NCBI RefSeq assembly: GCF_006345805.1
Contig: NC_043011.1
Span: 62,446,464 to 62,510,463, forward strand
Length of the DNA stretch: 64,000 bases
Direction of reading: 5' to 3'
Source: Octopus sinensis
Lineage: Eukaryota
The stretch's first letter is position 1, and every line of letters starts with the position of its first letter. Shown piece by piece: positions 3,839 to 46,355 of the stretch. The notes beneath the pieces are model-generated. The model did not search any database and was not told the origin of the DNA. It worked only from the letters and a program-made list of their open reading frames with translations. Made by a program: the position numbers and the translations under genes.

Positions 3839-3918
<80 letters not shown>
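3839..3918. repeat. (GA)n microsatellite
   Basis: Direct reading. Confidence 0.95.
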
Positions 3919-3920
<2 letters not shown>

Positions 3921-4268
3921 GAGTGAGAGACGAGAGAGAAGAGAGATGAGAGAAGAGAGAGAAAAGAGTAGGGCGAGAAATAGAGATGTACAATAAAAGC
4001 TTTTCTCATTTCTCAAGGGGGAAGTTATTAACAATTTCTTCCCCAATCTGTTAATAACAAAACATAAATGTAACGAGCTGATATCTAAAACCTGAGTTGA
4101 TGAGTTATAAAACTTCGGTCTTTATTAAAACGAATGACCGACAGGAAAATAAACAGCGACACTTGCTTTGTGAGCAGATAATAGCAAAGCCAACTGATGT
4201 TATATGCTAGGACATTCTTAATTAATTAATATCTTTGGTTTATTAGGCGGGGGATTGGCTGTGTGAAT

Positions 4269-4830
4269 AGGCGCAGGAGTGGCTGTGTGGTAAGTAGCTC
4301 GCTTACCGGGAAGAGTATAGCTATCAGCTGAGTTCATCATTGAGATTGTGCCGCGTCCTTCCCTTAGCGGGGAGAGGAAGGCCGTTTTTTCTGCGTGGTG
4401 ACCATATTGAAAGAAACAGTATGGAAGACGCGGTTGAAAGGGATTGTGACGGGTACCTTCGTATCTGGCCAGGGGTTAGTCAACTTTTTTAGTTACCACC
4501 TCAGCAGTAAGATCAGGCTGGAAAAGAGGTACCTGTCACATGAAAAATTCAGAAAAAGATGGAAGCTTATGGGGAGAAAGCTGGGAGTAACTGGCACCAA
4601 GTGAGCGGAGCCACGAAAAGAAAGCAAAGGTCCTACTCTGTGTATTGCCTTGTGGCAAATATTATAAAATAATGTAGCCCGCTTACCAGCCATATGGTTC
4701 CGAGTTCAGTCCCACTGCGTGTCACCTTGAGCATGTATCTTTTACTATAGCCTTAAGCCAACCAAAGCCATGTGAATGGATTTGGTAGACAGAAACTTAA
4801 GATGCCCGTCATATATGTTATATATATATA

Positions 4831-4890
<60 letters not shown>

Positions 4891-5118
4891 GTATATATGT
4901 GTGTGTTTGTATGTCAGTGTTTGTCTCCCACATCATCGCTTGACAACCGATGTTGGTGTGTTTACGTCCCCGTAACGTAGCGGTTTGGCAAAAAAGACTA
5001 GTAGAATAAGTATTAGGCTTACAAAGAATAGGTTCTGGGGTCGATTTGTTCGACTAAAAGGCGGTGCTCCAGCATGGCTGCAGCTAAATGACAGAAACAA
5101 ATAAAAGAATAAAAGAAT
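4269..5118 (+). mobile_element. SINE family A interrupted in its head by a LINE 3' fragment
   Basis: Head 4269-4307 resumes at 4674; remainder matches other family-A copies. Confidence 0.85.
4308..4673 (+). mobile_element. 5'-truncated L1/Tx1-like LINE 3' end with 14-bp target-site duplication
   Basis: ORF KETVWKTRLKG..FVSGQGLVNFFSYHLSSKIRLEKRYLSHEKFRKRW; A-rich tail; gtagctcgcttacc (4294-4307) vs gtagcccgcttacc (4674-4687). Confidence 0.7.
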
Positions 5119-5440
5119 TATGAATTCTCGCATCCTATTTGCCATTGTACTTACTGTCCGCCTCTAAATTGTCCGGCAAGGAACCAGGAATTAGTAGAAA
5201 GAAAGCTAAATCAGAATTTATTTAAAATGAATCGCACAAAAATCTATGAACTGCATTTTGCAACTATAAGATCCCAACGTCGTTCGATCCCACTGCATGG
5301 CAGGCTGGCAAAGTTTCATTTATCAACGGTTCGTGTCGACTCAAGGTAAACCGAGCGCTAGATTACATCATAATACATTAAAAAATTCCACTTAATTGCA
5401 ATTTCCTGGAATGTATTAATAATAGTATGAATAATTCAAT

Positions 5441-5675
5441 AGCGGCGAACTTGCAGAATCGTTTGCCCGACGGGAGAAATGCTTAGCGGTATTTCATCTG
5501 CCGTTATGTTCTGAGTTCAAATTCCGCCGAGGTCGACTTTGCTTTTCATCCTTTTGGGGTCGATTAAATAAGTACCAGTTACGCACTGGGGTCGATGTAA
5601 TCGACTTAATCCGTTTGTCTGTCCTTGTTTGTCCTCTCTGTGTTTAGCCTCTTGTGGGTGATAAGGAAATAGGTA
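5441..5675 (+). mobile_element. tRNA-derived SINE, family B
   Basis: gcggcgaacttgcagaatcg...gagttcaaattccgccgaggtcgacttt...ggggtcgat; many related copies in window. Confidence 0.8.
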
Positions 5676-6285
5676 TCAATAATTCAATGGGGGTCATATT
5701 GCCTCACTCACTGTAGCATAATTATTCTGTTTGAGGGTTTATGTGAAGGTTACATGTTACTGCGGAGTACTCAAGCATTCACGCAGTAAACCATTGACCA
5801 TTATATTCAGCTTATCGAACAATTCAGCACTCGTCGTAGAAACCGAGGGAGATCCATTTTAATATTTAAATGCGCCATTTTTAAACGATAACAAAAATAC
5901 AAATGTCCGTTTTCTGGAATACAAATGCCCCCTTATATTCTCTGCCTCATAAACGTCTGTAATAAACTTCACATCAATTGATAATGAATTTACTGGTAAC
6001 CGCTAGATGGCACTTGAACTGTTCAAATCAGTTTTCAAGTTTTCCTTGAAACACTGTCTTCTATGTTAAAAATGGCAGCCAATTGGTTAAGGGAGGTTTG
6101 ATGGGTAGAAATTGTGAGGGCGTCGATCGAATGCTTCCTGGCGAATGTTCTGGTATTTTGCATTCCGGGAGAATGAAAATGCTGCCGAGGTAAACCTTGT
6201 CTTTTATTTATCCATCTTCTGCGTTTGATATAAAAAGGTACCAGTAAAGAATTGGAAGTAGATACACTCTCATTCTTTCATTCAT

Positions 6286-6336
<51 letters not shown>

Positions 6337-6473
6337 CTCTCTCTCTCTCTCTCTCTCAGAATCGGTAAACCACCGCCTGTTTCTTGTCATTCAAGTAAGG
6401 ATGACAGTTGTTACCAAGCTCAAGCAAAAGAAGGGGATTGAGCCAGGAGCAACAAACATTTCTAATAGTAGTA

Positions 6474-6540
<67 letters not shown>

Positions 6541-6784
6541 CAGTAGTAGTAGTAGTGGTAGTAGCAGTAGAAGTAGCAGCAGTAATAGTAGTAGTAGTAA
6601 TGATGCCGATGAATGACATTACTCGCCAAAGTGGGTAGGGGGGCTCCAACACACTGAGAACAATATCAAAGTAGAAATACAACACAGAGTGAGTGGAGCT
6701 TGCACAGATCTAAAGTGTATAAAGAGAGGATATAACAAAAAAGAAAAAAAAGACAGAATTCAGAAAATAATGAAATTAATTATT

Positions 6785-7071: not shown

Positions 7072-7686
7072 AAAGGATGGCTCGTCCGAGAAACTAGCAT
7101 TCTTCCACTGCTCTAGGGACCAATTCTGTAGGTTTTTACTCCACACTCAGCGCTTCAAACCTTTATTATTCAAACTAGTAGTTTTCTGATTGCAGCTCCC
7201 GGCGTACAGGTTTTGCGGAAACTGGGTTCTCAAGGTGGTCATAAAGCTCTGCAGTAATTTTGGGAGCTGTACTTTGGGATCCTTTCTAACAATTAGCGTA
7301 AGAGTTCGACGGTCCCTATCTGAAAGTTTTGGCTTTCTTCTGGGGTTTTGTTTCAACGAGGAGGTTTTTACCTCTTTCTCAAAGTTTGTCATTACTTTTG
7401 AGACAGTATTTCTTGACAAACCAAACATTCGGCTGTTCTCGTTACGTTAGCGCCTGCCATACGAGCACCAACAATTTGACCTCTTTGAAAGTCCGACAGA
7501 TCTGTTATTTTTAAACAATTTTCATTACCTTTTTCTGAGGATATCTGAACACAAACAGCAATTTTAGCAAAACATATTAAGCAACACTAATTATAAATGG
7601 AAAAAAAAAAAACTTTTGACGGTTTTATAGATATTTCAAAATTATGATGCAATGATGCTAAGTGCTTCCATGATTTTGTTCAATCC

Positions 7687-7690
<4 letters not shown>
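7072..7690 (-). pseudogene. Tc1-family transposon 5' part (TIR, HTH domain, up to first catalytic Asp)
   Basis: TA-cagggattgaacaaaat TIR-like end at 7690; MFGLSRNTVSKVM..RKPKLSDRDRRTL; FSDEPSF at the breakpoint; paralogous to 26710-27897. Confidence 0.8.
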
Positions 7691-7755
<65 letters not shown>

Positions 7756-7906
7756 GTGAAATAGAAAGATGAATAATCTTGTAGTAGATTAATCAAAAGT
7801 TTAACCGATACCTTAGTAGCAAAAATCACAGCAGTAAACAGCACGGTTGGAGGTACAACCATATGGTGTTGCAACCGTGCGTTGGTGCGGATAATTGAAA
7901 TTAAAA

Positions 7907-8290
7907 TATTATTGGTGAATTGAAGAAATGGAGCTGAACGCAGATTGAACAGAAATCGTTTTATTTCATTCTACACGTGTTTCGAAAGGCACAATTTACC
8001 AAAATCCGATTGAATAATGGGACCATATTGTGTCTTTCTCTTCAGGAAGAAAATAGGAAATCCGTTGGAAACAAAAACAGAACAGAGGCGGAGCAAAAAC
8101 AAATCGAACTAGGCTCCTAAGAGCCCATGGCGAAACTGTTTATCAGTGTATGTTGAGAACCGGTGGCTGAAGAATTTAACGGGTCAGGCATCGGTCAATC
8201 ATGTGGGTGAGGGTGTATAGATGTTCTTTGTGACCGAGAATAAAGTTCTGACTATTTAAGGAATATTGGATGTTTTATAAGGGGCGAGAA
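7907..8290 (-). repeat. Left arm of 384-bp perfect inverted repeat (pLTR-like)
   Basis: Compared line by line with the reverse complement of 9441-9824; no mismatch seen. Confidence 0.95.
7969..8048 (-). ncRNA. Minimal type-I hammerhead ribozyme, sense to the ORF and downstream of it
   Basis: Exact reverse complement of 9683-9762. Confidence 0.8.
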
Positions 8291-8669
8291 TAAATCTACT
8301 TAGAGACGTGTGTGTGTGTATACTGTTCTATATATGTGTGTGTTGGCGTAGGGGTAGAAAACATTTTTTGTGTACGTGTGTGCGTTTGAACGTTCGGCTG
8401 TCAGTGGCTACTGCAGTGAGAACCGTTGGGTGGCAGAAAAAAAAAATATATATTATGTTTTATGTGTGTGTGTGTTTATCTAAGCCTGCCTTGTCAAGGA
8501 AACCCTCCGTTGTGAAAAAACCAAGCCCCGTTTATCTTACAGGAGTAATTCCCCTTGCAGTGGTTAATCGTAGATATCTTAAAGGCTATTTCAGAATTTG
8601 TTACCAAGGGCTATGGGTGCCGATATTATTTATAAACGCTATTTAAAAGCCAGATAAGTGTAACGCCGA

Positions 8670-9461
8670 CTATAAAAGCCCGTTTACCATCCGGCCTCTG
8701 GCAAACAAAATATGGAAGAGTTCGGAGACACAAAGGTTGCACTGCCTTCTGCCCCTATCAAATGGGAGGTCCACCGACAAAATTGACCATTCCAGCCTGT
8801 AGCTTAAGTTCGTATCCTTCAGTCGCCATACTAGCTTACTGAGTCCCGTGGTCTGGCGCTTGTTCATGTCCCGAAAAGTTGCGTAATGGTTGGAGACCCG
8901 CAAAGACAATCTTGAGGATGAGGCCCCTACATAAGTGAAGACATCTGAGTCCGTGTAAACCTTGCATTGGTAGACGGCGTTTTTGATCTTGGAGTTCGCC
9001 GACGTGAATCTTATTCTGCTAGGATTAGTTTCTGAAATTAGAACTCCGTTCCTGTCACTATATTCGTTCCGAGACCTGCAGCCGCTTACTACTCTATTTT
9101 CCACTACGTCACTATTAACTATAGGAATAACCCCTGAATCTCCACTATCTATCAGAGTGCTGTCATTGCTAGTGCCCGTGGTGCTGCTATTGCGGGAAAT
9201 GATGCTGGGGATGCTATTGTGGCTCACTACCCTACTCCCATTGTTACCGTCAACCACAACACCCCTATTTATAACTATACCCCTAGTGGGTACTCCCTGG
9301 CTGGAGCTGAGATTATGTGTCACTGTACTGGCTCCCATATCATTATTACTACTATAATTATTCCTACTGAACATTAAACCGGGAGCGGAAGAGGCTGTAC
9401 CTCCGGAAAAAGGTGATAGGGTCTTAGTAAGTAGCCTATTTTCTCGCCCCTTATAAAACAT
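8670..9461 (-). CDS. GIY-YIG endonuclease (Neptune-like PLE type) with a low-complexity S/N/G/V-rich N-terminus and no RT domain, 263 aa
   Basis: AVYQCKV..TYVG..RVSNH..LSKLVWRLK..WSIL..CNLCVSELFHIL..MVN supplies the expected Y, Y-G, R, H, E and N residues; frame uninterrupted. Confidence 0.75.
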   Translation of the reverse strand: MFYKGRENRLLTKTLSPFSGGTASSAPGLMFSRNNYSSNNDMGASTVTHNLSSSQGVPTRGIVINRGVVVDGNNGSRVVSHNSIPSIISRNSSTTGTSNDSTLIDSGDSGVIPIVNSDVVENRVVSGCRSRNEYSDRNGVLISETNPSRIRFTSANSKIKNAVYQCKVYTDSDVFTYVGASSSRLSLRVSNHYATFRDMNKRQTTGLSKLVWRLKDTNLSYRLEWSILSVDLPFDRGRRQCNLCVSELFHILFARGRMVNGLL

Positions 9462-9820
9462 CCAATATTCCTTAAATAGTCAGAACTTTATTCTCGGTCA
9501 CAAAGAACATCTATACACCCTCACCCACATGATTGACCGATGCCTGACCCGTTAAATTCTTCAGCCACCGGTTCTCAACATACACTGATAAACAGTTTCG
9601 CCATGGGCTCTTAGGAGCCTAGTTCGATTTGTTTTTGCTCCGCCTCTGTTCTGTTTTTGTTTCCAACGGATTTCCTATTTTCTTCCTGAAGAGAAAGACA
9701 CAATATGGTCCCATTATTCAATCGGATTTTGGTAAATTGTGCCTTTCGAAACACGTGTAGAATGAAATAAAACGATTTCTGTTCAATCTGCGTTCAGCTC
9801 CATTTCTTCAATTCACCAAT

Positions 9821-9824
<4 letters not shown>
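9441..9824 (+). repeat. Right arm of 384-bp perfect inverted repeat
   Basis: See left arm. Confidence 0.95.
9683..9762 (+). ncRNA. Minimal type-I hammerhead ribozyme with extended stem II
   Basis: ttc-CTGAAGA-gaaag..(cacaat/attgtg)..ctttc-GAAA-cacgtg-TA-gaa: 3-bp stem I, intact core, palindromic stem III, GUA cleavage triplet. Confidence 0.8.
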
Positions 9825-9917
<93 letters not shown>

Positions 9918-10042
9918 CGAGAGAAATAGATAGAGAGAGAGAGAGGGCGGGAGAGGAGAAAGAAAGAGAGACACACGTAGATTGTTGACGGTCGATAATT
10001 TAGATGACAAAAAAGACATAATTTAGATGACAAAAAAGAAAT

Positions 10043-10124
10043 ATATGATGCAGGGGAAATAACTCTCCCATCCTAATATTTGTTAATATATTAGGATGGG
10101 AGAGTTATTTCTCCTGTATTATAT
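10043..10124. repeat. Short hairpin (about 32-bp arms, 8-nt loop); possible MITE remnant
   Basis: atgcaggggaaataactctcccatcctaatat / atattaggatgggagagttatttctcctgtat, 2 mismatches. Confidence 0.8.
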
Positions 10125-10659
10125 TTTTTCTTTCTACCGTACTTTAATGGAGAAATGTCTTAGTTATGTCCCCTGTCAATCTCCCGGCTTCGAATCCATG
10201 ATGTGGGTTAGTATGCACAGATTACAACCGTTGTTCTTGCTTTATGCGAGTCTATGACGCTAATGATGAACGTATACTAACATACGTGTACTTTAACATG
10301 AATGTGTAAAACTATGTTACGTAGATGCTTGCATTCAGACACACACAAATATATTGTTGAAATTTCAATGAAGGAGTTTGCAATCTAGCTTTGAAACCGG
10401 CTCGTTCTCTACTGGTAAGAATTCTTGAAATAAAACTGAATAATGACATACACACATACATACATCCATCCATCCATCCATTCATACATACACACATGCA
10501 CACATACACATCCATCCATCCATCCATTCATCCATCCATCCATACATACATACGTATACACATACATACATACATACATACATACATACATACATACATA
10601 CATACATACATACATACGTATACACATACATACGTAAACACATACATACGTATACACAT

Positions 10660-11454
10660 ACAAGGTAATTGCCTCATCTTTAGAGATGATTGCCATGTCC
10701 CTGTGCTTCCTTTTTGTCAATAGAATTTCTGACCTTCCACTCATGACTTCTCATTTTACTATTAAATCCTACTACAGATTTGTATGGTTTGAACGGTGGG
10801 TGAGAGACGAAAGATGTAACATGAACTGGAATGATCGCATCACTCTGAGATCGGATCTCCGTCTGATATACCTCGAAATCCACTTGTACGCCCTTTCACA
10901 TACCACCCACGTTGAGTCACTTGGCTTAAATGGAAGGACATTGCATGCATTTTATACTTCGTGGGATTTCAGGCTTTTGACCTCCCATCTTTGGAGATAG
11001 ACTACACGTCCACAAATTCTACACCACCGGCAGTTTATGCTCTTATAGAGGTTCTGAATACAGCCACATGGAATCCAACTTTTTAGACGTTCTTGCTGTA
11101 GATAACTTTCTTGAAATATTTATCATAACCTTCAAATATATGCTTCCTCCATTCAACCCTTCCGAAAGCTAATTCTTCCCACTTTTATATATCAAGTTAC
11201 AGTTCCTTCAGGTTGCCTTTTTTGTGGCTTATACTGGAGACACATTCCAGCAGCTTTGGCATTCTATTATCTCCCATAACGCATAATATGACCTTCCCAA
11301 CACAACTCTGTAGATATTATGCATCCACCCTTTGAAAGGTCTCCATCCATTGCACCGATGAATCAGTAAGTGATTGACCTCTGATGACAGTTCATAACCG
11401 GGTTCCCTCTCCCTTGCCTCTCTCTTTCCCTCTCTCCTTCTTTCTCTCCCTCTC

Positions 11455-11494
<40 letters not shown>

Positions 11495-11690
11495 AACTCT
11501 GCCCATATCCAACTCAAATTCCGCATTAACCACAATAGACAGCTTTTACTTTCCAGAATATCAAATCTCTTGAATTCTCTCCTTACTCTTCCCTCTCCCA
11601 TAAACCCTGTTCTGCAACAGTTTAATCGGACCATTAATGCCATCAGAGTTACTTTTTTGGCTAAATGGTGCGGGGGGGAGTAAGTACCAA
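10660..11690 (-). pseudogene. RTE-clade LINE 3' fragment
   Basis: Frameshifted LCWEGHIMR(M)GDNRMPKLL, KWEELAFGRVEWRKHIFEG and CRICGRV resemble the RTE thumb and C-terminal motifs. Confidence 0.6.
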
Positions 11691-12404
11691 ACTTTTCGCC
11701 AGGTTTAACTCCCTGGGATGAATACGATGCAAAAATAAGAAAAGAACCGAAAAATCCTTAGCAATTCTTAGTTCAGATTTCCAAAATGGTTTCAGCTTCT
11801 TTGTATCATTAAGAAAAAATATTCTTGGACACATTTTCAAGTTTATTGCAACTATAATATTAAAATTCTTTCACTTGTTCTTGTACTGATAGTAGGACGA
11901 AATGAAGCCAGATCAAAGCACAATAAAAAAAAAACTTCCAGTCCATTAGAACTAATAATCTATCGTCTGGAAGTCCAATACTATAAGAACTCTACTAAAG
12001 ATCATCTAATTAAACATCGCATAAAAATGTAAATAAATTCTATGTCGCTATATATGCTATTAATTAGATCAGCCACGAATTCCTATGCCTTGGGGTAGCT
12101 ATTTAAAATATAACTTTCTCGAGGGTATTAACAGAAAGCAAATAGTAAATTGATCATTCCTGTTTTTGGCAAAATTATTAATGACGTAAGTATTGAAACA
12201 CCAGTTTGGCACCTAATCAATGTAAACTCCTGTAACCGTAATGTTATATATTGTTTGTTTCTTAGACAAAGGACCAGCAAATCTGATAAATATTCAATAG
12301 CATCTTAGCCTCTTTGACTGGCACATCATATTATCGACTGCGGTGGGATGAACGGCTAAGTTGACCTTGGCAGGACTAGAACTCAGAATGTATGTATGTA
12401 TTCT

Positions 12405-14587: not shown

Positions 14588-16699
14588 ATGGCTGTAAAGA
14601 TCAACTAATGATCAATAAAGCCATAACTGAAGACAGCCAAAGAAAGAAGAAAGGCCTCAGTATGGCCTGGATCGACTACAAAAAGGCGTTTGATAGCATC
14701 CCCCACACATGGATCCTCGAAACACTAGCCATTAACAAAGTAGCACCAACAATCATAAAATTCATAGAGCACTCTATGAATAAATGGCAAACAGTCCTAC
14801 ACCTCCAAACAAAAGAGGGACTCATGAAAACCAAAGACAACCCCATTAGAAGAGGAATATTCCAGGGAGATACGCTCTCTCCACTCCTTTTCTGCTTGGC
14901 ACTGTCACCTCTATCTGATATGCTAAATAGAACTGGATGCGGATATAAATGTTACGGCAAAACGATCAGCCACCTTTTAAATATGGATGACCTAAAACTA
15001 TACGCTGCAAATGACAAACAGCTGGAAACACTATTAAAGACAGTTCATGGATTTACCAAAGAAATAGATATGAAATTTGGATTAGAAAAATGCGCCAAAG
15101 TAACCATGAAAAGAGGAAAACTAGTTAAGAGTAACAACATCACACTAGATAAAACCAATGAAATAAAAGAATTAGACCAAAGCCAAACTTACAAATACTT
15201 AGGAATCAATAGACTACATATGATACAACGCACACAAATGAAAGAGAAAATAAAGAAAGAATACTATAGACGAATTAGACCTATACTGGAAAGAGAGCTC
15301 AACGCTAAAAACAAGATAGCAGGCATTAACACTTTAGCCGTCCTAGTTATAAGTTGCAGCTACAATATCCTTAACTGGATACTAAATGAATTAACCAACA
15401 TTGATAGGAAAACAAGAAAAATAATGACAGGATCTAGGATGCATCACCCAAAATCTGACATAGAAAGGCTATATATACAACGTATAGAAGCTGGTAGAGT
15501 CCTTATAAAGCTGGAAAACTACTATAAAATAACCACCATAGGACTGCAAAAATACCTAGAAGCAAAGAAAACTGATACAAATAGCGGCAAAACACGAGCA
15601 AAGCAAAAAACTGTTCTCAGTATTCAAGGAAGGTGACAAATACAAACGAGAAATCATACCACCTAAGAAATATGAAGAAGAAGAAGAAGAAGAAGAAGAA
15701 GAAGAAGAAGAAGAAGAAGAAGAAGAAGAAGAAGAAGAAGAAGAAGAAGAAGAAGAAGAAGAAACAACAAAAGCTATGAAACAAATGAAATGCAAACTAA
15801 AACTAGAACAGCACCGGACCATGATAAAACGATGGCAAGAAAAGCCCCTTCGTGGCAAGTACTGGACTAAACTAAATGCAAAAGAAATAGACAAAGAAAA
15901 ATACCAGCAATGGTTGAGAAGCTCAGGACTTAAAGCAGAGACGGAGGGATTTTTAATTGCAGCACAAGACCAAAGCTTCCCCACCAGAAATTACCAAAAA
16001 TATATAATGAAAAGAAATATAACAAGTAACTGCAGAATATGTGGAGATGGACAAGAAACAATAAATCATATTTTATCTGGCTGCCCAGTCCTGGCTAAGA
16101 AGGAATATATTCACAGGCACGACAGAGTTGGAACCTACATACATTGGAAGCTATGCCAACATTATGGAATAACAACAGAAAAAAGATGATATAAGCACAC
16201 ATTAGAGAAGGTCACAGAAAACGAGAAAGCAACCATACTCTGGGATATGCCGATACACACAGATAGAGAAATTAAGGCCAACAGACCAGATATAGTTGTC
16301 AGAGATCATGAAGAAAATAAATGCTTTCTAATTGATGTATCAATACCGGCAGATGACAACGTGTCTCTAAAAGAAATGGAGAAATTTTCAAAATACAAAA
16401 ACCTGGAAATAGAAGTAACTCGAATGTGGAATCTAAAAACAGAAACAATTCCTATCATAGTAGGCGCATTAGGTATGATAAAAAGATATTCAGACAAATG
16501 CATAACAAAAACATCAGGACTTACAAATATATATAACATACAGAAAATTGCACTACTGGGCACTGCACACATCCTACGCAAAACACTTACAACACAGTAA
16601 CCATAAGAGCATCACAACAAACCACAGCACATACCCAAGGCACACAGAGCTGCGCTCGGTAGTGAAGTGAAAGCACGCTATAAAAATAAAACTACTGAA
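14588..16699 (+). pseudogene. 5'-truncated R4/Dong-type non-LTR retrotransposon (RT, CCHC finger, REL endonuclease), subfamily A
   Basis: AWIDYKKAFDS, GIFQGDTLSP, NMDDLKLY, CRICG..HILSGC..RHDRVG, RPDIV..DVSIP..KE..K; flanked by (TAA)n; frameshift near 15550 and stop at 16187-16189. Confidence 0.9.
15674..15763 (+). repeat. (GAA)30 inside the R4/Dong ORF, encoding poly-Glu
   Basis: 90 nt, in frame between IIPPKKY and TTKAMKQ. Confidence 0.9.
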
Positions 16700-19593: not shown

Positions 19594-20400
19594 CAGGATC
19601 AGAAGAGAATGTTATCGCAGGGTGAGAGCAATACTCAAGACAGAGCTGAATGCGAGAAACAGGATCGAAGCGATCAATGTTTTAGCCATACCAGTCGTGA
19701 CTTACAGTTTCAATATCGTTAACTGGTCAATTACTGAAATATGTAATCTTGACAGAAAAATACGAAAACTGTTGACAATGCATAGAATGCACCACCCTAA
19801 GGCAGATATAGAACGACTTTACCTGCCAAGAAAAGAGGGAGGCCATGGACTTTTACAAATGGCAATAACAATGAAGATTGCTGCAATTGGCCTACACACC
19901 TACCTGAAAAACTCTGAGGACTGGATGTTAAAACTTGTCTCAAAACATGAAAACAAGAAAGCATCATACTCAGTAACAAAACAGGCAAAGGAATATCTAA
20001 GTGAATTCCGAATACAACAAATTTCGGAATTAGAGATAGACATACAAGAAACAGGCACAGAAAAAGCTAAGCGCATGAAAACCCGGGCTAAAACTGCTGC
20101 CTTAGATATTCTGACTGATAACTGGCAAGAAAAACCTCTCTATGGCAAATACCCAAAGAGAGTGAATAATGCAGATGTTGACAAAGCCCTGACCCATCAA
20201 TGGCTAATGGCCTCTGGCTTAAAATCTGAAACAGAAGAGATTATAATAGCAGCTCAAGATCAATGCCTACCAACAAGAAACTACGAGGCAAACATATTAA
20301 AGAATGGCAGCTTTTCAACATGTCGTGTATGTCAACAACAAAATGGAACCATTGATCATGTTGTCTCCATGTGCAGTCTTCATGCGCCTACAGAATATCA
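19594..20400 (+). pseudogene. R4/Dong-type LINE internal fragment (thumb to zinc finger)
   Basis: RMHHPKADIERLYLPRKEGG, WLMASGLKSETE..AAQDQ, CRVC..H..SMC; preceded by (CAA)n, broken at a SINE. Confidence 0.85.
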
Positions 20401-20404
20401 CAAA

Positions 20405-20447
20405 GAAATTATGAGTAGATTTGGCAGACGGAAACTGAAAGAAACCC

Positions 20448-20545
<98 letters not shown>

Positions 20546-20865
20546 TAGATATACGTATATATAACGTACGTGTGTTACTTATTTGTATCTGTGCTTGTTC
20601 CCCCACAATCGCTTGGCAACCGATAATGGCGCGTTTACATCCCCATAAATCAGCGGTTCGCCAAAAGATACCGATAGAATAAGGCTTGCAAATGATAAAT
20701 CCTGGGGTCGATTTGTTCGACTAATTATGAAGTGAGGCACGTGACCGACCCCACAAAGCACATTTCAACACAGAATCCTTTGGTAGACTCTTTAATTTCT
20801 AGCCCAAATAAGCTCCAGCATGGTCGCAGTTAAATGACTGAAACAAGTAAAAGAATATAAAAGAC
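20405..20865 (+). mobile_element. SINE family A (head missing) containing an ~80-bp inverted fragment related to 22005-22087
   Basis: 20722-20803 reverse complement resembles the 3' end of the Tx1-like copy. Confidence 0.65.
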
Positions 20866-26075: not shown

Positions 26076-26596
26076 AGAGCGACAACATAATAATACATTG
26101 TCATAAGAATTCATAAACTTCATTAGAACGCGAAGCGATTCAGAGTTTTTTTTTAAGATTTAATTTGTAGAAAAAGAATTCGAAATCTACCTGTGAGAGT
26201 CGACCCTGTATCCTCCAAGGGAGTTTTCAACCCAATACTTACATACTATTATTTGTAGCTTTTCTACTTCGAGTTTAACTGTTATAAAGAAAAACAATTA
26301 CTTCACAATAAAACGCTGTAATTTTGTTTCGTTTTAACGCTCATTTATCAAGACTGAATTCCACTCAAATTATTGGCTGCCATTATAAAATTACAGCTTC
26401 GTCTAAATCAATGATATATATATATATATATGTGGAAAGGCGAGATAGGGGAGGAGGTGAGATATAAATTTTGATTAATGGGAAATTGGATCGCTAATCT
26501 GATGGAGAGTGGCTTTCATCCAGAGATATCCGCGCACCAGATTCACTAACACTCTGCTCTTGTCAGACAGATAGACAGATAGATATGTATGTGAAT

Positions 26597-26689
<93 letters not shown>

Positions 26690-26709
26690 GTATATATATA
26701 TTTGAATAT

Positions 26710-27896
26710 ATATATTGCCTTTGGCAGTAATTACAACTTGAATTCTACGAGGTATGGACTCGTACAAAGTCTGAATTGTTTCCAAAGGAATGTTTGTCCG
26801 CTCTTCAGCTAAAACAGTCTCCAGTTCTTGTAGTGATGATGGAAGAGTGTATCGACTCCTTATTTGTTTTCCTAAAATGCACCATAAATGCTCAATAATA
26901 TTGAGACCCGGGGACTGTGGTGCCCAGATAAGATGTTCAACTTCACTGGAATGTTCGTCCTCCCATGCAATAACAAATTTAGCTGTGTGAAATAGTGCAT
27001 TATCATCCTGAAAGATAGAGGTCCCCTCCGGAAGCAGTTCCACAGCCATAGGATAAATTTGATCAGATAAAATGCTTAAATAGTGTTGACTATTAATTTT
27101 GCCATGGAGGGAAACCATTGGGCCGGCGGATTTCCGAGATATTAGCCCCCCTCCTATATCATCACAGATCCTCCTCCATTTTAAACAGTTGGAAGAAGGC
27201 TGTTAAATGCTTCTTTTGGCTGTATCCACACATATACTCGGCCGGTGGGCGGAAATAAGGTAAAGGATGGCTTGTCCGAGAAAATGACATTCTTCCACTG
27301 CTCTAGGGATTAATTCTGTAGGTTTTTACTCTACACTAAGCGTAGGTTTTTACTTCACACAAAGCCCTCCCGTGTAATCCAGCTTTGCGCAGCTCCCGGC
27401 GTACAGGTTTTGCGGAAACTGGGTTCTCAAGGTGGTCATAAAGCTCTGCAGTAATTTTGGGAGCTGTACTTTGGGATCCTTTCTAACAATTAGCGTAAGA
27501 GTTCGACGGTCCTTATCTGAAAGTTTTGGCTTTCTTCTGGGGTTTTGTTTCAACGAGGAGGTTTTCCCCTCTTTCTCAAAGTTTGTCATTACTTTTGAGA
27601 CAGTACTTCTTGACAAACCAAACATTTCGGCTGCTTTCGTTACGCTAGCGCCTGCCATACGAGCACCAACAATTTGACCTCTTGGAAAGTCCGACAGATC
27701 TGTCCTTTTAATGAATTTTAACTACCTTTTTTGATGATATCTGAAAAGAAACAGCAATTTTAGCAAATCATATGAAGAAAAAACTAATAATAAATAAAAA
27801 AAAACTAAAAATAAACAAGCTCTTGACGGTTTTATACACATTTCAAAACTATGATGCAATGATGCTAGTTGTTTCCATTATTTTGTCCAACTCTTG

Positions 27897-32835: not shown

Positions 32836-34905
32836 AACTGTCACAACAAGCGCAGAAATCTCAGCACCGCATGGATTGACTACAAAAAGGCCTTCGACAG
32901 TATACCGCATCCATGGATCTTGAGATCGCTGGACATCTTTAAAATTTCCCCTGTGATTTCAAACTTCCTGAAGCACAATATGTCGTTGTGGAATACGAAT
33001 CTCCAATTATACCACTCTAATGGAGTACTTGCCTCAGAAAATATAAACATCAACTGTGGAATTTTTCAAGGTGACTCACTTTCACCTTTAATATTCTGCA
33101 TAGCCCTAATACCCCTTACAAGTGAATTAAACAGAACAGGGTATGGGTATAAAATTGCCAATAAAAAAATAAGCCATCTATTTTATATGGATGACTTAAA
33201 ACTTTATGGCAAAGACAATAATGAACTTGAAGGCCTATTGCGCACCGTGAAAGCATTCAGCGATGACATCGGGATGGAGTTTGGACTTGAGAAGTGTGCC
33301 AAGGCCACTTTCCAGAAAGGGAAAGTGAAGACCACAAATTCAGTCGTGTTAGATGTTGACACAGTCATAAGAGAGCTTGAGCAAGAACAGACATACAAAT
33401 ATTTAGGGATAAATGAAGGCTCTGGCATTCAGCATGCAAGCATGAAAGAGAAAATCAGAAGGAATGTTATAGGAGAGTTCGTGCAGTCCTGAAATCTGAA
33501 CTAAATGCACGTAACAAGGTGTTAGCTATAAATTCCTTAGCAGTTCCAGTTGTTACTTATAGCTACAATGTGTTGAACTGGAATATGAGTGAAGTAAAGA
33601 ATATAGATAGAAAAATACGCAAGCTGCTGAGTTGTAATAGGATGCACCACCCAAGGCAGACGTAGATCGCCTTTACCTTCCCAGAGCCCAAGGAGGTCGA
33701 GGCCTGATCCAATTTGAACTAGCTTACAAAACAACCACAATTGGACTGGCCAAATATCTCGAAATATCGAATGACTGGATGCTAAAGCTCGTGGAAAATC
33801 ACGAGAGACGAAAGAAGCTTCATTCTATCATCAAGAAAGCAAAAAATGTGCTATTGATCTCGTGCAGGATACCCAAACTGAACAACCCGAGGGAAGTACG
33901 GCAACTATTGTTGCAAAGAAGGTGAAAATGATGGCAATGAAAAAAGCGCACGAGCAATTGGCTGATAGGTGGGAGGAGAAACCTCTGCACGGCAAATATG
34001 TGACCCGCAGCAAACAAGCTGATGTTGACCAGAAGCAAACCCATCAGTGGCTGCGGAGCTCAGGGCTAAAAGCAGAGAGCGAACGTTTCATCCTGGCTGC
34101 TCAAGACCAAAGCCTATTAACCCGGAACTACCAGGCCAATGTGATGAAAAATGGAGCAGAACCAAAATGCCGATTCTGCAACGACATGATTGAAACAGTG
34201 AACCACCTAATCTCTGGATGTAAAGTCTTAGCACCAGTGGAGTATAAATTAAGACATGACAGAGTTGGCCAATATCTCCACTGGCTAATAAGTCGGCATT
34301 ACAATATCAAAACTGCCGACAAGTGGTATAATCACCACCCTGAGGCTGTAACTGAAGGAGAAAATGTAACCATTCTGTGGGACTTTCCAGTACATACAGA
34401 CCGAACCATCAAGGCCAATAAACCAGATATTGTTGTGAAAGACCAAAACAATAAAGTTTGCTCATTGATCGACATGAGCATCCCCTGTGATCATAATATC
34501 TCAGCGAAAGAGTTTGACAAGCTCAGAAAATATAAAGACCTACTCATTGAAATTGAGAAAATGTGGCATCTCAAGGCGGTTACAATACCAGTGATCGCAG
34601 GAGCACTAGGAATGATCAAGAAGGGAACCGAAAATTATATGAGAATGATCCCTGGCTTACAATCCCTGCAAGAAGTGCAAAAGATTGTCTTAACTGGTAC
34701 ATCGCACGTATTGAGAAGAGCATTGTCGATGTGAGAACTGTTGCTGCTCATGTATTTTAAATTAACTTTAAAAAAAAAAAAAAAGGAACGAACTACTGAG
34801 TTTGGTTTAATGGCCTACCAATATACACTATGAGTTTCTTTGCCCTAGGAGTCGGGAAGACACTCGGCAAGAAATGGAAGAAAATTTGAAAGAAGAAAAA
34901 AAAAA

Positions 34906-38216: not shown

Positions 38217-39248
38217 CAAAAAACTGTTCTCAGTATTTAAGGAAGCTGACAAATACAAACAAGAAATCATACCACCTAATAAACACAAAGAAGAAGAAGA
38301 AGATGATGAAGAAACAACAAAAGCTATAAAACAAATGAAATCCAAACTAAAAATAGAACAGCAACGAGCCATGATAAAACGATGGCAAGAAAAGCCCCTT
38401 CATGGTAAATACTGCACTAAACTAAGCGGAAAAGAAATAGACAAAGAAAAATCCCAGCAATGGTTGAGAAGCTCAGGACTCAAAGCAGAAACAGAGGGAT
38501 TTTTAATTGCAGCACAAGACCAAAGCCTCCCCACCAGAAATTACCAAAAACATGTAATGAAAAGAAATATTACAAGTAACTGCAGAATATGTGGAGATGG
38601 ACAAAAAACAATAAATCATATTATCTCTAGCTGCCCAGTCCTGGCTAAGAAGGAATATATTCACAGACATGACAGAGTTGGAACCTACATACATTGGAAG
38701 CTATGCCAACATTATGGAAAACAACAGAAAAAAGATGGTATAGGCACACACCAGAAAAGGTCACAGAAAACGAGAAAGCAACCATACTCTGGGATATGCC
38801 GATACACAAAGATAGAGAAATTAAGGCCAACAGACCAGATATAGTTGTCAGAGATCATGAAGAAAAAAAATGCTTTCTAATTGATGTATCAATACCGGCA
38901 GATGACAACGTGTCTCTGAAAGAAATGGAGAAACTCTCAAAATACAAAGACCTGGAAATAGAGATGACTAGAATGTGGAACCTGAAAACAGAAACAATTC
39001 CTATCATAGTAGGTGCATTAGGCATGATAAAAAAATATTCAGACAAATACATAACAAAACACCAGGACTTACAAACACATATAACATACAGAAAATTGCA
39101 CTACTAGGCACTGCACACATCCTACGCAGAACACTTTCCATACATAAACCATCAGAGCATCACAACAAATCACAGCACATACCCAAGGCACACAGAGCTG
39201 CGCTCGGTAGTGAAGTGAAAGCACGCTATAAAAATAAAACTACTGAAT
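38216..39248 (+). pseudogene. R4/Dong subfamily A 3' part (zinc finger, REL, 3' UTR)
   Basis: Highly similar to 15600-16699; one frameshift near 38715. Confidence 0.9.
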
Positions 39249-42130: not shown

Positions 42131-42230
42131 NNNNNNNNNNNNNNNNNNNNNNNNNNNNNNNNNNNNNNNNNNNNNNNNNNNNNNNNNNNNNNNNNNNNNN
42201 NNNNNNNNNNNNNNNNNNNNNNNNNNNNNN
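42131..42230. other. Assembly gap (100 N)
   Basis: Direct reading. Confidence 1.
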
Positions 42231-44184: not shown

Positions 44185-46089
44185 TATATTATTGTCCAAA
44201 ATCAAAGAGTAGGAGCAGGACAGAGTAAGAGAAATAGTAGTATAAGTAAAGAGGAGGAGAGAAAATAGTAATTCAGTGAAGGAGAAGTAGTGAGAGTAAT
44301 AGCCTTGACTGAGAGGGAGTGAGAGAAAGTAATAGCAATGAGGGAAAGGAAGTGGCAAAGAGCGCGTCGTTTATCTTGTTTTTTCTCCCTCACAACATAT
44401 GAATGAGAAAGGAAGGGGCGGAAAACAATCAGCCTTTCAACTCTTTGTGAGTATATGTGTGTGTGCCTGTAAAAGGGAGATATGTGACTGTTTGTATGTA
44501 TGTATGTATGTATGTGTGTGCGCGCGTGCAATGGAAATGGGATGGTGAACGTTTAGCGCTAGAAAGAAAAAATTGAACTTTGTTTATGTGTGTGTATGTG
44601 TATGCAGGTACAAGGGAAGTATGTGGATGTTTGTATCTGTCATTATTTTGTACCTTATTTTATATATAAAATATTACAAGTAGCCGTCATTTTGACGGCA
44701 CAAGGTCAGTCAGTTAAGTAATAAGACCTCTGGTTAGATAATAGCGAGGCTACCCGTGGAACACGAATTCACATCTTTTGTAAAGATGATAGACGTTCTA
44801 AAACTGGACGAAAACAAACCTTTGAATTTCTAGATCCTGGAACTTTATTCTTACTAGACAGAGGCAACATCGTATGTTTTTGACATCATAGGAATATATA
44901 AACTTCGAGTGAGCGTGAAATAATTCTTTTTTTTTTAACGTTGTGATATAGAAGCAGATAATGCTGTGAACAATAACGTATAAATACTGGTTTCAAATAC
45001 CCTTGGGTTGAAAACGTCGAAATATTCATATAAAAGTTTAGTAGTAATTAACTGGCAGACTTTGGCTGATGAGAAATCAGGCACCTATTTGGCGCTAAAT
45101 TTCGAAACCGGTACTAAGTTGACCAACATTACTTGTTCTGACCCAGTAGAGGTGAGAGGTTATTATTGTTCACTGAATTTTTTTCCTATCATATCTGTAG
45201 TAAATTTGTGACTATTCGGTGGCACGGAATTATTTTTGACTTCTATTTTTTAGCGATGTAGGTGCTCATATAATGCCCTTGTGTATATATGTACGTAACT
45301 AACATTGTATGTATATATTTTATTAATTTGCCTGTACGACTGATAATTCGCTTGCCACTCGTGATGGTGTGTTAATAATAACATCCCTATATTTATTCAA
45401 ATAAGTTATGTAGAAAATTTAAACGTATAGAAATATAATTCCCTATAAAACAAATAAAATGTCCAAATGGATGACAACCGCCATCTCGGGAGAATCCGAT
45501 CATCGCCCCTTCCCGAACGTAGCATCTTCGCAGAAATGAAACAGTGGTTGGTTCTCTATTTCGTATTAATTGTCTCAGATGTAGCGATCTTTCATTAAAT
45601 CCTCTTCACCACAAGCAAAAAAAAAAAAAAAAAAAAACCGGCTTTTCTGCGGATCAGTTCAATGTCTTTTTAAAACGTAGATCTGATTGACACATTCTGG
45701 AATTCATATTTCTCAGTTCCAGCTTCGTTGCTGCTTCTTTCTAAATTCCATCTCCACGGTGCCATACGTTGACAGTATCTACTGCTTCGTTCGCTATGAG
45801 AGAATTCTGTGACGATTCCTTTCCTGTTTGGCCAATGGTGTTGATGGTGAGGGACCTACTTATGCAAACCGTTCGCGCGATCTCACCATGATATTTTATC
45901 GCATTTAAGAGTTGTCTTATCTTTGTCTATAAGGCACACATTTGATATTTTAAAGGTCACAGCCCTGTAATGAAAGAAACACCGTAAAATCTCCGACACT
46001 TTTTACAGTCGTGCCCAAAAGTTTGCAACATGAATAAAAAATTGAAATTGTCATGTCCAAGAACAATTCGATTCAATAGAGTTCTATAT

Positions 46090-46355
46090 TCAAGAGATGA
46101 GTAATTATGTACATTATTCACATTATTTAAATTTGACGATCATTGGAGACCACATTCCCATGTGGGATGAAGTTAAAACAATAGACAGAGAACACCACGG
46201 GAAAATACGAAAACTAAAAGAAGCAGCACATATGCTAGGACACAGCAACCTCCTAAGCAGACCCAGTGCAGGTATGAGCAGCATATGGGAACCGGTATTA
46301 AGGAAGGATAGGGAAATATTAGATTTATAATCCCTAAAATTCCTTCCATAATCAC
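46090..46355 (+). pseudogene. PLE GIY-YIG endonuclease C-terminal fragment
   Basis: GDHIPMWDEVKTIDREHHGKIRKLKEAAHM..LLSRPS..SIWEPVL. Confidence 0.6.

What the first reader, a model, noticed from the sequence alone, without database searches (positions are those of the whole stretch)
7753..9824. Young RT-less Penelope-like element encoding only an intact GIY-YIG endonuclease between ribozyme-bearing inverted repeats
Seen: two 384-bp inverted repeats with no mismatch found (7907-8290, 9441-9824) flank an open 263-codon ORF whose C-terminal ~100 aa carry the GIY-YIG residues (VY..YVG..R..H..E..N) and the CNLC motif; (TA)n lies on both sides. There is no RT; ~160 aa of S/N/G/V-rich sequence sit where RT should be. 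Known: PLEs encode RT plus GIY-YIG and have HHR-bearing pLTRs that can be inverted at the 5' end; animal retrozymes are non-coding. Inference: a recent, semi-autonomous class that supplies its own endonuclease and borrows RT in trans, intermediate between PLEs and retrozymes.
Basis: partly seen in the sequence, partly recalled or inferred. Interest (0 to 1): 0.85.

Follow-up and report, generated by a model that had tools for sequence, protein, structure and literature searches.

The report
Truncated octopus Penelope-like retroelement copy
This is a young, 5'-truncated copy of a known kind of retrotransposon (a Hydra-clade Penelope-like element) in an octopus-type genome; it lost its reverse-transcriptase part when it inserted, so it is not a new RT-less class of mobile element.

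Summary
Two 384-nt inverted arms (7907-8290, 9441-9824) have no mismatch. A 263-codon ORF (8670-9461, minus strand) ends in a GIY-YIG-type nuclease domain. (TA)n lies on both sides, and each arm carries a hammerhead ribozyme.

ORF codons 8-263 line up with the C-terminal third of RT-EN polyproteins in Octopus sinensis relatives. In those relatives the same N/S-rich stretch and nuclease sit directly downstream of a reverse transcriptase, and one relative (L004) starts at its N-terminus. The window copy breaks inside a conserved motif (SHNNKLL) exactly at the inner edge of the right arm. That arm supplies the ATG and six codons.

The nuclease matches the Hydra clade of Penelope-like elements (Craig et al. 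2021): no CCHH motif, a CxxC before the catalytic Glu, (TA)n targets, hammerheads. A 5'-truncated copy joined to an inverted partial copy is the standard PLE insertion scar. It recurs here in a 220-bp mini-copy and in the full-length relative.

Two minor points of interest remain. The octopus lineage has lost the CxCX5C linker but still inserts into (TA)n. Its hammerhead has a 55-nt helix II that Rfam misses at threshold.

The parts
7690..7752 (.). Left half of the (TA)n target microsatellite
   Evidence: (TA)31 run. Related copies in L003 and L004 are also flanked by (TA)n.
7753..7906 (-). 3'-terminal 'tail' of the element, present at this end only
   Evidence: Collinear with the arm in the 3' ends of the RT-EN relatives: window 7690-8048 matches L003 12690-12331 at 78%, and window 7757-8048 matches L004 7441-7168 at 74%. 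Its last 48 nt are 95% identical to one end of the L003 mini-copy. It is absent from the inverted arm.
7907..8290 (-). Left arm: the segment of the element's own 3' UTR (sense orientation) that is duplicated in inverted form at the 5' end
   Evidence: Exact reverse complement of 9441-9824. Homologous to the 3' UTRs of L003, L004 and L001.
7966..8051 (-). Type I hammerhead ribozyme, sense copy. It has a CUGAAGA core, a ~55-nt helix II, GAAAC, and a palindromic helix III (ACACGUGU). The predicted cut is after A7972.
   Evidence: Descriptor hit with 0 hits in 200 shuffles. Mirror of the RF00163 sub-threshold match. Covariation in alignment A2.
8291..8669 (-). Unique part of the 3' UTR
   Evidence: Lies between the stop codon and the left arm; no ORF homology.
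8670..9056 (-). GIY-YIG-type endonuclease domain (Hydra-clade type), codons 136-263 plus the stop
   Evidence: 2207 cluster representatives at E<=1e-3. Catalytic residues conserved. Fold matches. Pairwise pN 0.18 against pS 0.73 versus L003. The C-terminal CxH motif is missing.
9057..9440 (-). N/S/G/V-rich low-complexity linker (codons 8-135), homologous to the linker between the RT-associated domain and EN in octopus relatives
   Evidence: tblastn of window codons 8-263 against L003 10904-11698: 48.5% identity, E 2e-67. The same stretch occurs in P0151, P0166 and the L004 ORF.
8670..9461 (-). The 263-codon ORF. Codons 1-7 (MFYKGRE) come from the inverted arm and codons 8-263 from the truncated polyprotein. 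An in-frame stop lies 6 codons upstream of the ATG.
9441..9824 (+). Right arm: inverted duplicate of 7907-8290 (a partial second copy, head-to-head)
   Evidence: 0 mismatches in 384 nt. Its outer end abuts (TA)n at the same sequence position as in the L003 mini-copy, the L004 5' fragment and the L001 3' end.
9680..9765 (+). Hammerhead ribozyme copy, antisense to the ORF
   Evidence: RF00163 full-length alignment, 14.8 bits, E 0.49. Descriptor hit 9686-9759.
9825..9916 (.). Right half of the (TA)n target microsatellite
   Evidence: (TA)35 and (TA)10 runs.

Best explanation
The feature is one recent insertion of a Hydra-clade Penelope-like retrotransposon (PLE) into a (TA)n microsatellite of an octopus-type genome. 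Read on the minus strand it consists of:
- a 384-nt inverted partial copy of the 3' UTR;
- a 5'-truncated main copy holding the last ~256 codons of the RT-EN polyprotein (linker plus GIY-YIG nuclease);
- the full 3' UTR with its hammerhead;
- a 154-nt tail.

The reverse transcriptase and the conserved domain before the linker were never copied into this site. The ORF looks complete only because the inverted arm happens to supply an ATG in frame, and because the copy is too young to have decayed.

Proposed mechanism (inferred; it rests on published PLE biochemistry). The element's protein cuts both strands of the AT-rich target and extends both by target-primed reverse transcription, from two alternative internal start sites on the RNA. 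One cDNA started at the distal site (tail end, 7753) and ran about 1.7 kb to the truncation point (9440). The other started at the proximal site (arm outer end, 9824) and ran 384 nt. The two were joined head-to-head.

The copy cannot move by itself. Any movement or expression of its nuclease would be incidental.
For: Shown here:
1. Arms, ORF and (TA)n flanks are as described.
2. ORF codons 8-263 are collinear with the C-terminal part of RT-EN ORFs in O. sinensis. The match to L003 has E 2e-67, and L004 is a near-full-length copy. The break falls inside the conserved SHNNKLL motif, at the arm edge.
3. The RT-proximal part of the L003 ORF finds 145 proteins. Many are ~700 aa and sit on ~2.5-kb contigs. 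The 710-aa member P0174 models at pLDDT 91, and its best PDB matches are telomerase RTs (E 5e-9).
4. The nuclease family carries the published Hydra-clade marks: no CCHH, CxxC before E, CxH after N, and CxCX5C, RWK and DKT motifs in full-length members (PMC8557442 section 11).
5. The hammerhead is supported by a shuffle control and by covariation.
6. The same end structure recurs in independent insertions. The L003 mini-copy (8477-8700) equals the window element minus 7803-9646, at 92-95% identity. L004 has a ~40-nt inverted piece of the same arm end between (TA)n and its 5' UTR.

From the literature:
- Inverted 5'-truncated copies, one-sided tails and (TA)n targeting are PLE hallmarks (PMC8557442).
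- A purified PLE protein cleaves and extends both strands, starts reverse transcription at two internal sites, and the tail is the sequence between those sites (PMC11167929).
- Paired PLE hammerheads on opposite strands are common (PMC4209133).
Against: - No RT-bearing copy of the same subfamily (>=90% identity) was seen. The RT-bearing relatives are only 48% identical in protein and 71-78% in DNA, and the source genome could not be searched.
- Only five related insertions were examined.
- The tail is 154 nt, against the 30-40 nt described for canonical PLEs.
- The family lacks the CxCX5C linker that defines Hydra ENs in the literature.
- Expression of the ORF cannot be excluded.
- The GIY-YIG fold matches are weak (E >= 0.06).
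Confidence: 0.9

Rival explanations
1. One reading: a propagating, semi-autonomous RT-less PLE derivative that encodes its own endonuclease and borrows RT in trans.
For: The ORF is open with an ATG. The catalytic residues are intact. The nuclease domain has been under purifying selection between subfamilies. A related RT-EN family with a 78%-identical 3' UTR and hammerhead exists and could act in trans.
Against: The break lies inside a conserved protein motif, and the start codon comes from the inverted arm, with a stop 6 codons upstream. The ORF lacks the conserved C-terminal CxH motif. There is no second copy with this layout in the window or in five related loci. The layout is the known random 5'-truncation plus inversion scar of PLEs (PMC8557442). 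The purifying selection measured is between lineages and says nothing about this copy.
Confidence: 0.04
2. A cut-and-paste DNA transposon with 384-bp terminal inverted repeats and a GIY-YIG nuclease serving as its transposase.
For: Perfect inverted repeats flank one ORF, with TA-rich flanks.
Against: The arms are a duplicate of an internal 3' UTR segment of a retroelement family whose full-length members encode a TERT-like RT. The element is asymmetric, with a 154-nt tail beyond one arm only. Relatives lack long inverted repeats: L003 has none and L004 only ~40 nt. The inverted piece has a different length in each insertion (384, 170, ~40 nt).
Confidence: 0.01
3. The inverted arm is not part of the insertion event. 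It would be a later local rearrangement (fold-back or inverted duplication) or an assembly artefact.
For: 100% identity over 384 nt is what an artefact or a very recent duplication would also give. A 100-N gap elsewhere in the window shows that the assembly is not gap-free.
Against: The same kind of junction (an inverted piece ending at the same arm end next to (TA)n) occurs in two other insertions in the O. sinensis assembly. The arm's outer end coincides with a recurrent element terminus rather than a random point. The N gap is at 42131-42230, far from the feature.
Confidence: 0.05

Closest known systems
Hydra clade of C-terminal EN+ Penelope-like elements (Craig, Yushenova, Rodriguez & Arkhipova 2021, PMC8557442)
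   Same: The GIY-YIG EN lacks the CCHH motif and has a CxxC just before the catalytic Glu. Relatives also have a CxH after the Asn, and an RT with DKT and RWK-type motifs. The elements are short, insert into (TA)n, carry a hammerhead in the terminal repeat, and show 5' truncation plus inverted partial copies and a one-sided tail.
   Different: This copy has no RT (truncated) and no CxH. The whole octopus subfamily (window, L001, L003, L004) has replaced the CxCX5C zinc-finger-like linker with a long N/S-rich low-complexity stretch plus a Cys-free ISETNP.R.RF.S.NSK segment. Hammerhead helix II is ~55 nt, and the tail is ~150 nt.
Canonical EN+ PLEs (Penelope/Poseidon, Neptune, Nematis)
   Same: Overall plan of RT plus C-terminal GIY-YIG EN, pLTRs with hammerheads that have small palindromic helix III, inverted 5' copies, a tail, and a preference for AT-rich targets (PMC4209133, PMC11167929).
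   Different: Their defining CCHH motif (two Cys between GIY and YIG) is absent here. Only one Cys lies between the VYQ and YVG motifs.
Animal non-LTR retrozymes
   Same: Hammerhead-bearing, non-autonomous and PLE-related (PMC7229834; bioRxiv 10.64898/2026.07.22.740005).
   Different: Retrozymes are non-coding tandem repeats with direct hammerheads that yield circular RNAs. This is a single insertion with inverted hammerheads and a coding remnant.
LINE-1 twin-priming inversions
   Same: A 5'-truncated retroelement copy with an inverted 5' segment, created by priming from both target strands (from my own knowledge of Ostertag & Kazazian 2001).
   Different: In L1 the inverted part is a different, upstream portion of the same RNA. 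Here it duplicates the 3' UTR, which implies a second template or a second initiation, as reported for PLE protein in vitro.

Membership tests
Hydra-clade PLE | C-terminal GIY-YIG EN without the CCHH motif (no pair of Cys between GIY and YIG) | tested here: met
   VYQCKVYTDSDVFTYVG has a single Cys. The family alignment shows the same.
Hydra-clade PLE | CxxC before the catalytic Glu and CxH after the conserved Asn | tested here: inconclusive
   CNLC..E is present (C241, C244, E247). CxH is absent because the ORF stops 3 aa after N260. Relatives have it: CPH in L003 and L004, CKH in L001.
Hydra-clade PLE | Linker with a CxCX5C motif upstream of EN | tested here: not met
   The window, L001, L003 and L004 have no Cys there. 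Argonauta P0037, P0167 and most other family members keep CNCR....C. This is read as a lineage-specific loss, because the flanking domains are homologous.
Hydra-clade PLE | PLE-type RT (TERT-like) with RWK and DKT motifs, upstream of EN in the same ORF | tested here: not met
   Absent from the window copy. Present in relatives: L004 has SDKTRN, FIQFDI and YRDD; P0174 has RWK and ADKT. The P0174 model matches telomerase RTs best. The absence is explained by 5' truncation.
Hydra-clade PLE | Insertion into (TA)n | tested here: met
   (TA)n on both sides of the window copy, both L003 copies and the L004 copy, and 3' of the L001 copy.
Hydra-clade PLE | Hammerhead ribozyme in the terminal repeat | tested here: met
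   It is below the Rfam gathering score because of a 51-nt insertion in helix II.
GIY-YIG nuclease superfamily | GIY-YIG fold with conserved Tyr, Tyr/Gly, Arg, His, Glu and Asn | tested here: met
   The residues are conserved. The top four distinct Foldseek PDB matches are GIY-YIG enzymes, but weakly (E 0.06-1.2, TM ~0.5). Pfam PF01541 appears only as a sub-threshold hit in homologue P0201.
Type I hammerhead ribozyme (Rfam RF00163) | CUGANGA...GAAA core, helices I-III, cleavage after GUH; score at or above gathering | tested here: inconclusive
   The core and all helices are present and covary. The variation among copies falls on N7 and H17. The Rfam score is 14.8 bits against a gathering score of 34. 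Self-cleavage was not tested.
Canonical PLE EN (cd10442 type) | CCHH zinc-finger-like motif inside the GIY-YIG core | tested here: not met
   definition from PMC8557442.
Non-LTR retrozyme | Non-coding tandem direct repeats, each with a hammerhead | tested here: not met
   The hammerheads are inverted, the insertion is single, and it holds a coding remnant.
TIR DNA transposon | Symmetric terminal inverted repeats at both extreme ends, a transposase, a fixed TSD | tested here: not met
   A 154-nt tail lies beyond one arm only, and the arms are internal 3' UTR sequence of a retroelement.

The most novel reading that the evidence does not exclude
This truncated layout is not a dead end. EN-only copies with an arm-supplied start codon would be transcribed from the inverted pLTR, and would make a working (TA)n-nicking nuclease. 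That nuclease would help RT-bearing relatives or hammerhead mini-copies to integrate, giving a split, two-component PLE system in octopus.
Probability: 0.04. Interest if true: 0.7.

Novelty: new member of a known kind. Interest (0 to 1): 0.15.

Why it matters
For the scan, an apparently new element class turns out to be the standard insertion scar of a described retrotransposon clade.

Some modest value remains:
- It documents a recently active Hydra-clade PLE lineage in Octopus. A zero-mismatch 384-nt inverted duplicate implies a recent insertion.
- This lineage keeps strict (TA)n targeting although it has lost the CxCX5C linker. Craig et al. proposed that this linker mediates (TA)n recognition, so the lineage is a natural test of that idea.
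- Its two alternative 3' ends and both-strand copies match the in vitro behaviour reported for a vertebrate PLE protein.
- Its long-helix-II hammerhead escapes Rfam thresholds.
- Its N-rich linker causes RefSeq to name these transposon ORFs 'myb-like protein I', 'dyrk1' and 'DDB_G...-like'.

Tried and rejected
- Pfam on the ORF and on octopus RT-EN ORFs gave no usable hit. There was only a sub-threshold RVT_1 in P0167 and a sub-threshold GIY-YIG in P0201.
- PDB sequence searches with the domain and with the family profile gave nothing meaningful. The three hits at E ~0.3 are chance.
- Rfam found no hammerhead, either at gathering score or in a 3.6-kb E-value scan.
- The first word-indexed protein search found a single homologue. 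The exhaustive HMMER search was needed.
- An exact-sequence look-up of the window ORF in public assemblies found nothing on record, so the source genome and same-subfamily copies could not be examined.
- Supplementary files of Craig et al. are not held, so no direct comparison with named Repbase Hydra families was possible.
- BLAST extended the ORF alignment 11 codons into the arm (RIKF*...). I rejected this as spurious: it contains a stop and has 3 matching residues.
- dN/dS between subfamilies is about 0.07-0.13, but dS is saturated and the value says nothing about this copy.
- I considered a TIR DNA transposon and an assembly artefact and rejected both (see rivals).
Full report
1. OBSERVATION

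Arms 7907-8290 and 9441-9824 are exact reverse complements over 384 nt. The repeat finder extends them to 389 nt at 99%.

Between the arms, on the minus strand, lies an ORF of 263 codons (8670-9461). Its ATG sits 21 nt inside the right arm. An in-frame stop lies six codons upstream of that ATG.

(TA)31 lies to the left (7690-7751). (TA)35 plus (TA)10 lie to the right (9826-9916). No other copy of any part of the element occurs in the 64-kb window.

2. THE PROTEIN

Pfam and PDB sequence searches with the ORF found nothing. An exhaustive HMMER search with the last 128 residues found 2207 cluster representatives at E<=1e-3.

These proteins share one pattern: CxCX5C ... V(V/I)Y.A.V ... YIG.T..FK.R...H..SF ... 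T.LS..W.LK ... W.I ... CxLC..E...I ... LN.R.E...C(R)H. This is the description Craig et al. give for the EN of their 'Hydra' clade of Penelope-like elements:
- no CCHH motif;
- a CxCX5C linker;
- RWK and DKT motifs in the RT;
- elements under 3 kb, inserted into (TA)n, with canonical hammerheads (PMC8557442, section 11).

In the window ORF, Y164, Y177, G179, R188, H192, C241, C244, E247 and N260 occupy the invariant or nearly invariant columns. An AlphaFold2 model of the domain is confident (pLDDT 88.5). Its best PDB matches are GIY-YIG nucleases (T4 EndoII, Hpy188I, PD-T4-3, I-TevI), though with weak statistics (E 0.06-1.2).

The ORF stops three residues after N260. It therefore lacks about 20 residues, including the CxH motif that L003, L001 and L004 keep. 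'Intact' is true of the catalytic residues only.

3. WHERE THE RT IS

The closest relatives are in Octopus sinensis.

In locus L003 a single open frame (9290-11752) runs from a (TA)n tract through, in order:
- RT motifs (FIQFDIGNFYPSI, VPMGSSDSAQ, LYRDD, NFLDVTL..YRPYHKP..SNH);
- a conserved domain (NYIWFVIPFGKQ...SHNNKLL);
- an N/S-rich low-complexity stretch;
- the nuclease.

Window codons 8-263 align with its last third (48.5% identity, E 2e-67). The alignment starts at NRLLTKTLSP against NKLLNKTLSP, exactly at the inner edge of the right arm.

Locus L004 holds a near-full-length relative. A 710-aa family member (P0174) aligns from its first residue at L004 3858. The ORF runs to 6556, and the RT region matches P0174 at E 1e-89.

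Other annotated octopod proteins show the same order of RT C-terminus, IWF domain and N-rich stretch. They are P0151 and P0166 (O. sinensis), P0269 (O. bimaculoides) and P0037 (Argonauta hians). Where their sequence reaches that far, the nuclease follows (P0037, and the start of it in P0151).

A search with the RT-proximal part returned 145 proteins. Many are about 700 aa and sit on ~2.5-kb contigs. The model of P0174 (pLDDT 91) matches telomerase reverse transcriptases best (E 5e-9), then other RTs. This is expected for a PLE RT.

So the S/N/G/V-rich sequence is the family's own linker, not something in the place of RT.

4. THE RIBOZYME

Rfam reports no hammerhead at gathering score, nor in a 3.6-kb E-value scan. 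On a 131-nt stretch it gives a full-length but sub-threshold RF00163 alignment at 9680-9765 (14.8 bits against 34). The penalty comes from a 51-nt insertion in helix II.

I wrote a descriptor with these requirements: CUGANGA; helix II of at least 5 bp; GAAA; helix III of at least 3 bp ending in U; H17; and helix I with at least 5 of 6 pairs. It hits both arms and one further site. It hits nothing in 200 dinucleotide-preserving shuffles of the window.

Homologous segments from L003 (two) and L001 (one) keep the core. They vary only at N7 (A/U) and H17 (A/C). On the four-sequence alignment:
- 91% of cells are paired, against 34-47% when partners are slid;
- 8 pairs change on both sides, against 0-1 in the slid controls;
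- the central pair of the palindromic helix III changes with them, so the palindrome is kept or nearly kept (ACACGUGU / ACAUAUGU / ACAUGUGU).

With four sequences this is suggestive rather than statistical proof, but all measures agree.

A small palindromic helix III, a large helix II and paired motifs on opposite strands are described for PLE hammerheads, which are thought to act as dimers (PMC4209133). The sense copy relative to the ORF is in the left arm (8051-7966, minus strand). The right-arm copy is antisense.

5. ANATOMY AND ORIGIN

The element does not end at the left arm. Window 7690-8048 is collinear with the 3' end of the L003 element (78%) and window 7757-8048 with that of L004 (74%), up to their (TA)n. 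So 7753-7906 is a 154-nt terminal extension, present at one end only.

Two termini recur next to (TA)n:
- The arm end (...CCATTTCTTCAATTCACC). It is found at the window's right side, at the right end of the L003 mini-copy, at the 3' end of L001, and as a ~40-nt inverted fragment in front of the L004 5' UTR.
- The tail end. It is found at the window's left side, at the left end of the L003 mini-copy, and at the L003 and L004 3' ends.

The L003 mini-copy (8477-8700) is 92-95% identical to the window element with 7803-9646 removed. It is an independent insertion of the same subfamily with the same end structure.

Published work fits this pattern. PLE insertions are typically 5'-truncated, often with an inverted 5'-truncated copy at the 5' end and a one-sided tail (PMC8557442). 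A purified PLE protein cleaves and extends both target strands, prefers AT-rich DNA, and starts reverse transcription at two internal RNA sites. The tail is the sequence between those sites (PMC11167929).

My inference is as follows. One cDNA began at the distal site and stopped in the linker-coding region. A second began at the proximal site on the other strand and stopped after 384 nt. The two were then joined. Two sequence details agree with this but prove nothing:
- An imperfect 12-nt extension of the arms, containing a shared CTACTTA, lies at the inner junction.
- 7 nt (AATAATA) are shared between the start of the tail and the right flank.

Zero differences between the arms imply a very recent event (inference).

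6. VERDICT

This is a dead, young, 5'-truncated copy of an octopus Hydra-clade PLE. It is a new member of a known kind. The window is probably from Octopus sinensis or a close relative. The evidence is the 92-95% identical mini-copy and near-identical LINE ORFs; this is an inference.

The RT-less semi-autonomous class is not supported. It cannot be strictly excluded without the source genome, and I give it 0.04. The octopus lineage's loss of the CxCX5C linker while keeping (TA)n targeting is the most useful by-product.

Noticed in passing
window 9057-9130; L001 10440-10620; L003 11230-11400; L004 5972-6200: The octopus subfamily has no Cys in the EN-proximal linker, so the CxCX5C motif is lost and replaced by N/S-rich sequence plus ISETNP.R.RF.S.NSK. 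Yet every copy examined sits in (TA)n. This bears on the proposal in PMC8557442 that this linker mediates (TA)n targeting.
   Followed up: partly
L003 8477-8700: A ~220-bp mini-copy of the window's own subfamily (92-95% identity), inserted in (TA)n. It consists of 48 nt of the tail end joined to 170 nt of the arm with its hammerhead, which equals the window element minus 7803-9646.
   Followed up: yes
L004 3600-8485: A near-full-length relative laid out as: (TA/TG)n, then a ~40-nt inverted arm-end fragment, 5' UTR, RT-EN ORF (3858-6556, with one frameshift near 5975 and an early stop near 4005), 3' UTR with a slightly degenerate hammerhead (~7160-7255), tail, and (TA)12. A second, 78%-identical copy starts at 7502.
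   Followed up: partly
window 45066-45113 (+): A third hammerhead-like motif: CUGAUGA, GAAAC, palindromic helix III ACCGGU, cut after GUA. It was found by the descriptor (0 hits in shuffles) but has no Rfam match even at E<=10. It is not in (TA)n. About 1 kb downstream, ORF 46097-46330 (+) loosely resembles a canonical PLE EN C-terminus by eye, but Pfam finds nothing.
   Followed up: partly
window 7796-7812 versus L004 3843-3857 and 7502-7516: The 12-nt motif TTAACCGATACC sits just upstream of the ORF start in both L004 copies. It also occurs, in the opposite orientation, inside the tail of the window, L003 and L004 elements. It may be a conserved terminal signal or chance.
   Followed up: no
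P0001, P0002, P0151, P0166, P0269 (O. sinensis and O. bimaculoides RefSeq/GenBank proteins): Fragments of these PLE ORFs are annotated as host genes: 'DDB_G0288805-like', 'probable serine/threonine-protein kinase dyrk1', 'myb-like protein I', 'GATA zinc finger domain-containing protein 14-like'. The N-rich low-complexity linker is the likely cause.
   Followed up: partly
window 14608-16189, 19622-20548, 32920-34734, 38335-39107 (+); 26546-27118 (-): The window is repeat-rich. It holds several LINE fragments (RVT_1 at E 1.5e-19; a weak zf-RVT hit) that are nearly identical in protein to a LINE fragment next to the L001 copy in O. sinensis. It also holds a DDE_3 (Tc1/mariner-type) transposase remnant just below the Pfam cut-off.
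   Followed up: partly
window 10033-10137: A near-perfect ~30-bp-stem hairpin (GGGAAATAACTCTCCCATCCTAATAT...ATATTAGGATGGGAGAGTTATTTC) lies just right of the (TA)n/(GA)n tract. It gives sub-threshold matches to several plant miRNA models (best 40 bits against a gathering score of 111). It is probably a small palindromic repeat.
   Followed up: no
window 42131-42230: A run of 100 N (assembly gap).
   Followed up: no
L003 9116-9300 and 12850-12960: The (TA)n tracts that received the L003 PLE copies are themselves bordered by inverted copies (~90% identical) of another short repeat. In translation it reads ...LSSFSSRAVAMLGHRHLV.... This suggests a (TA)n-associated SINE-like element that supplies PLE target sites.
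   Followed up: no
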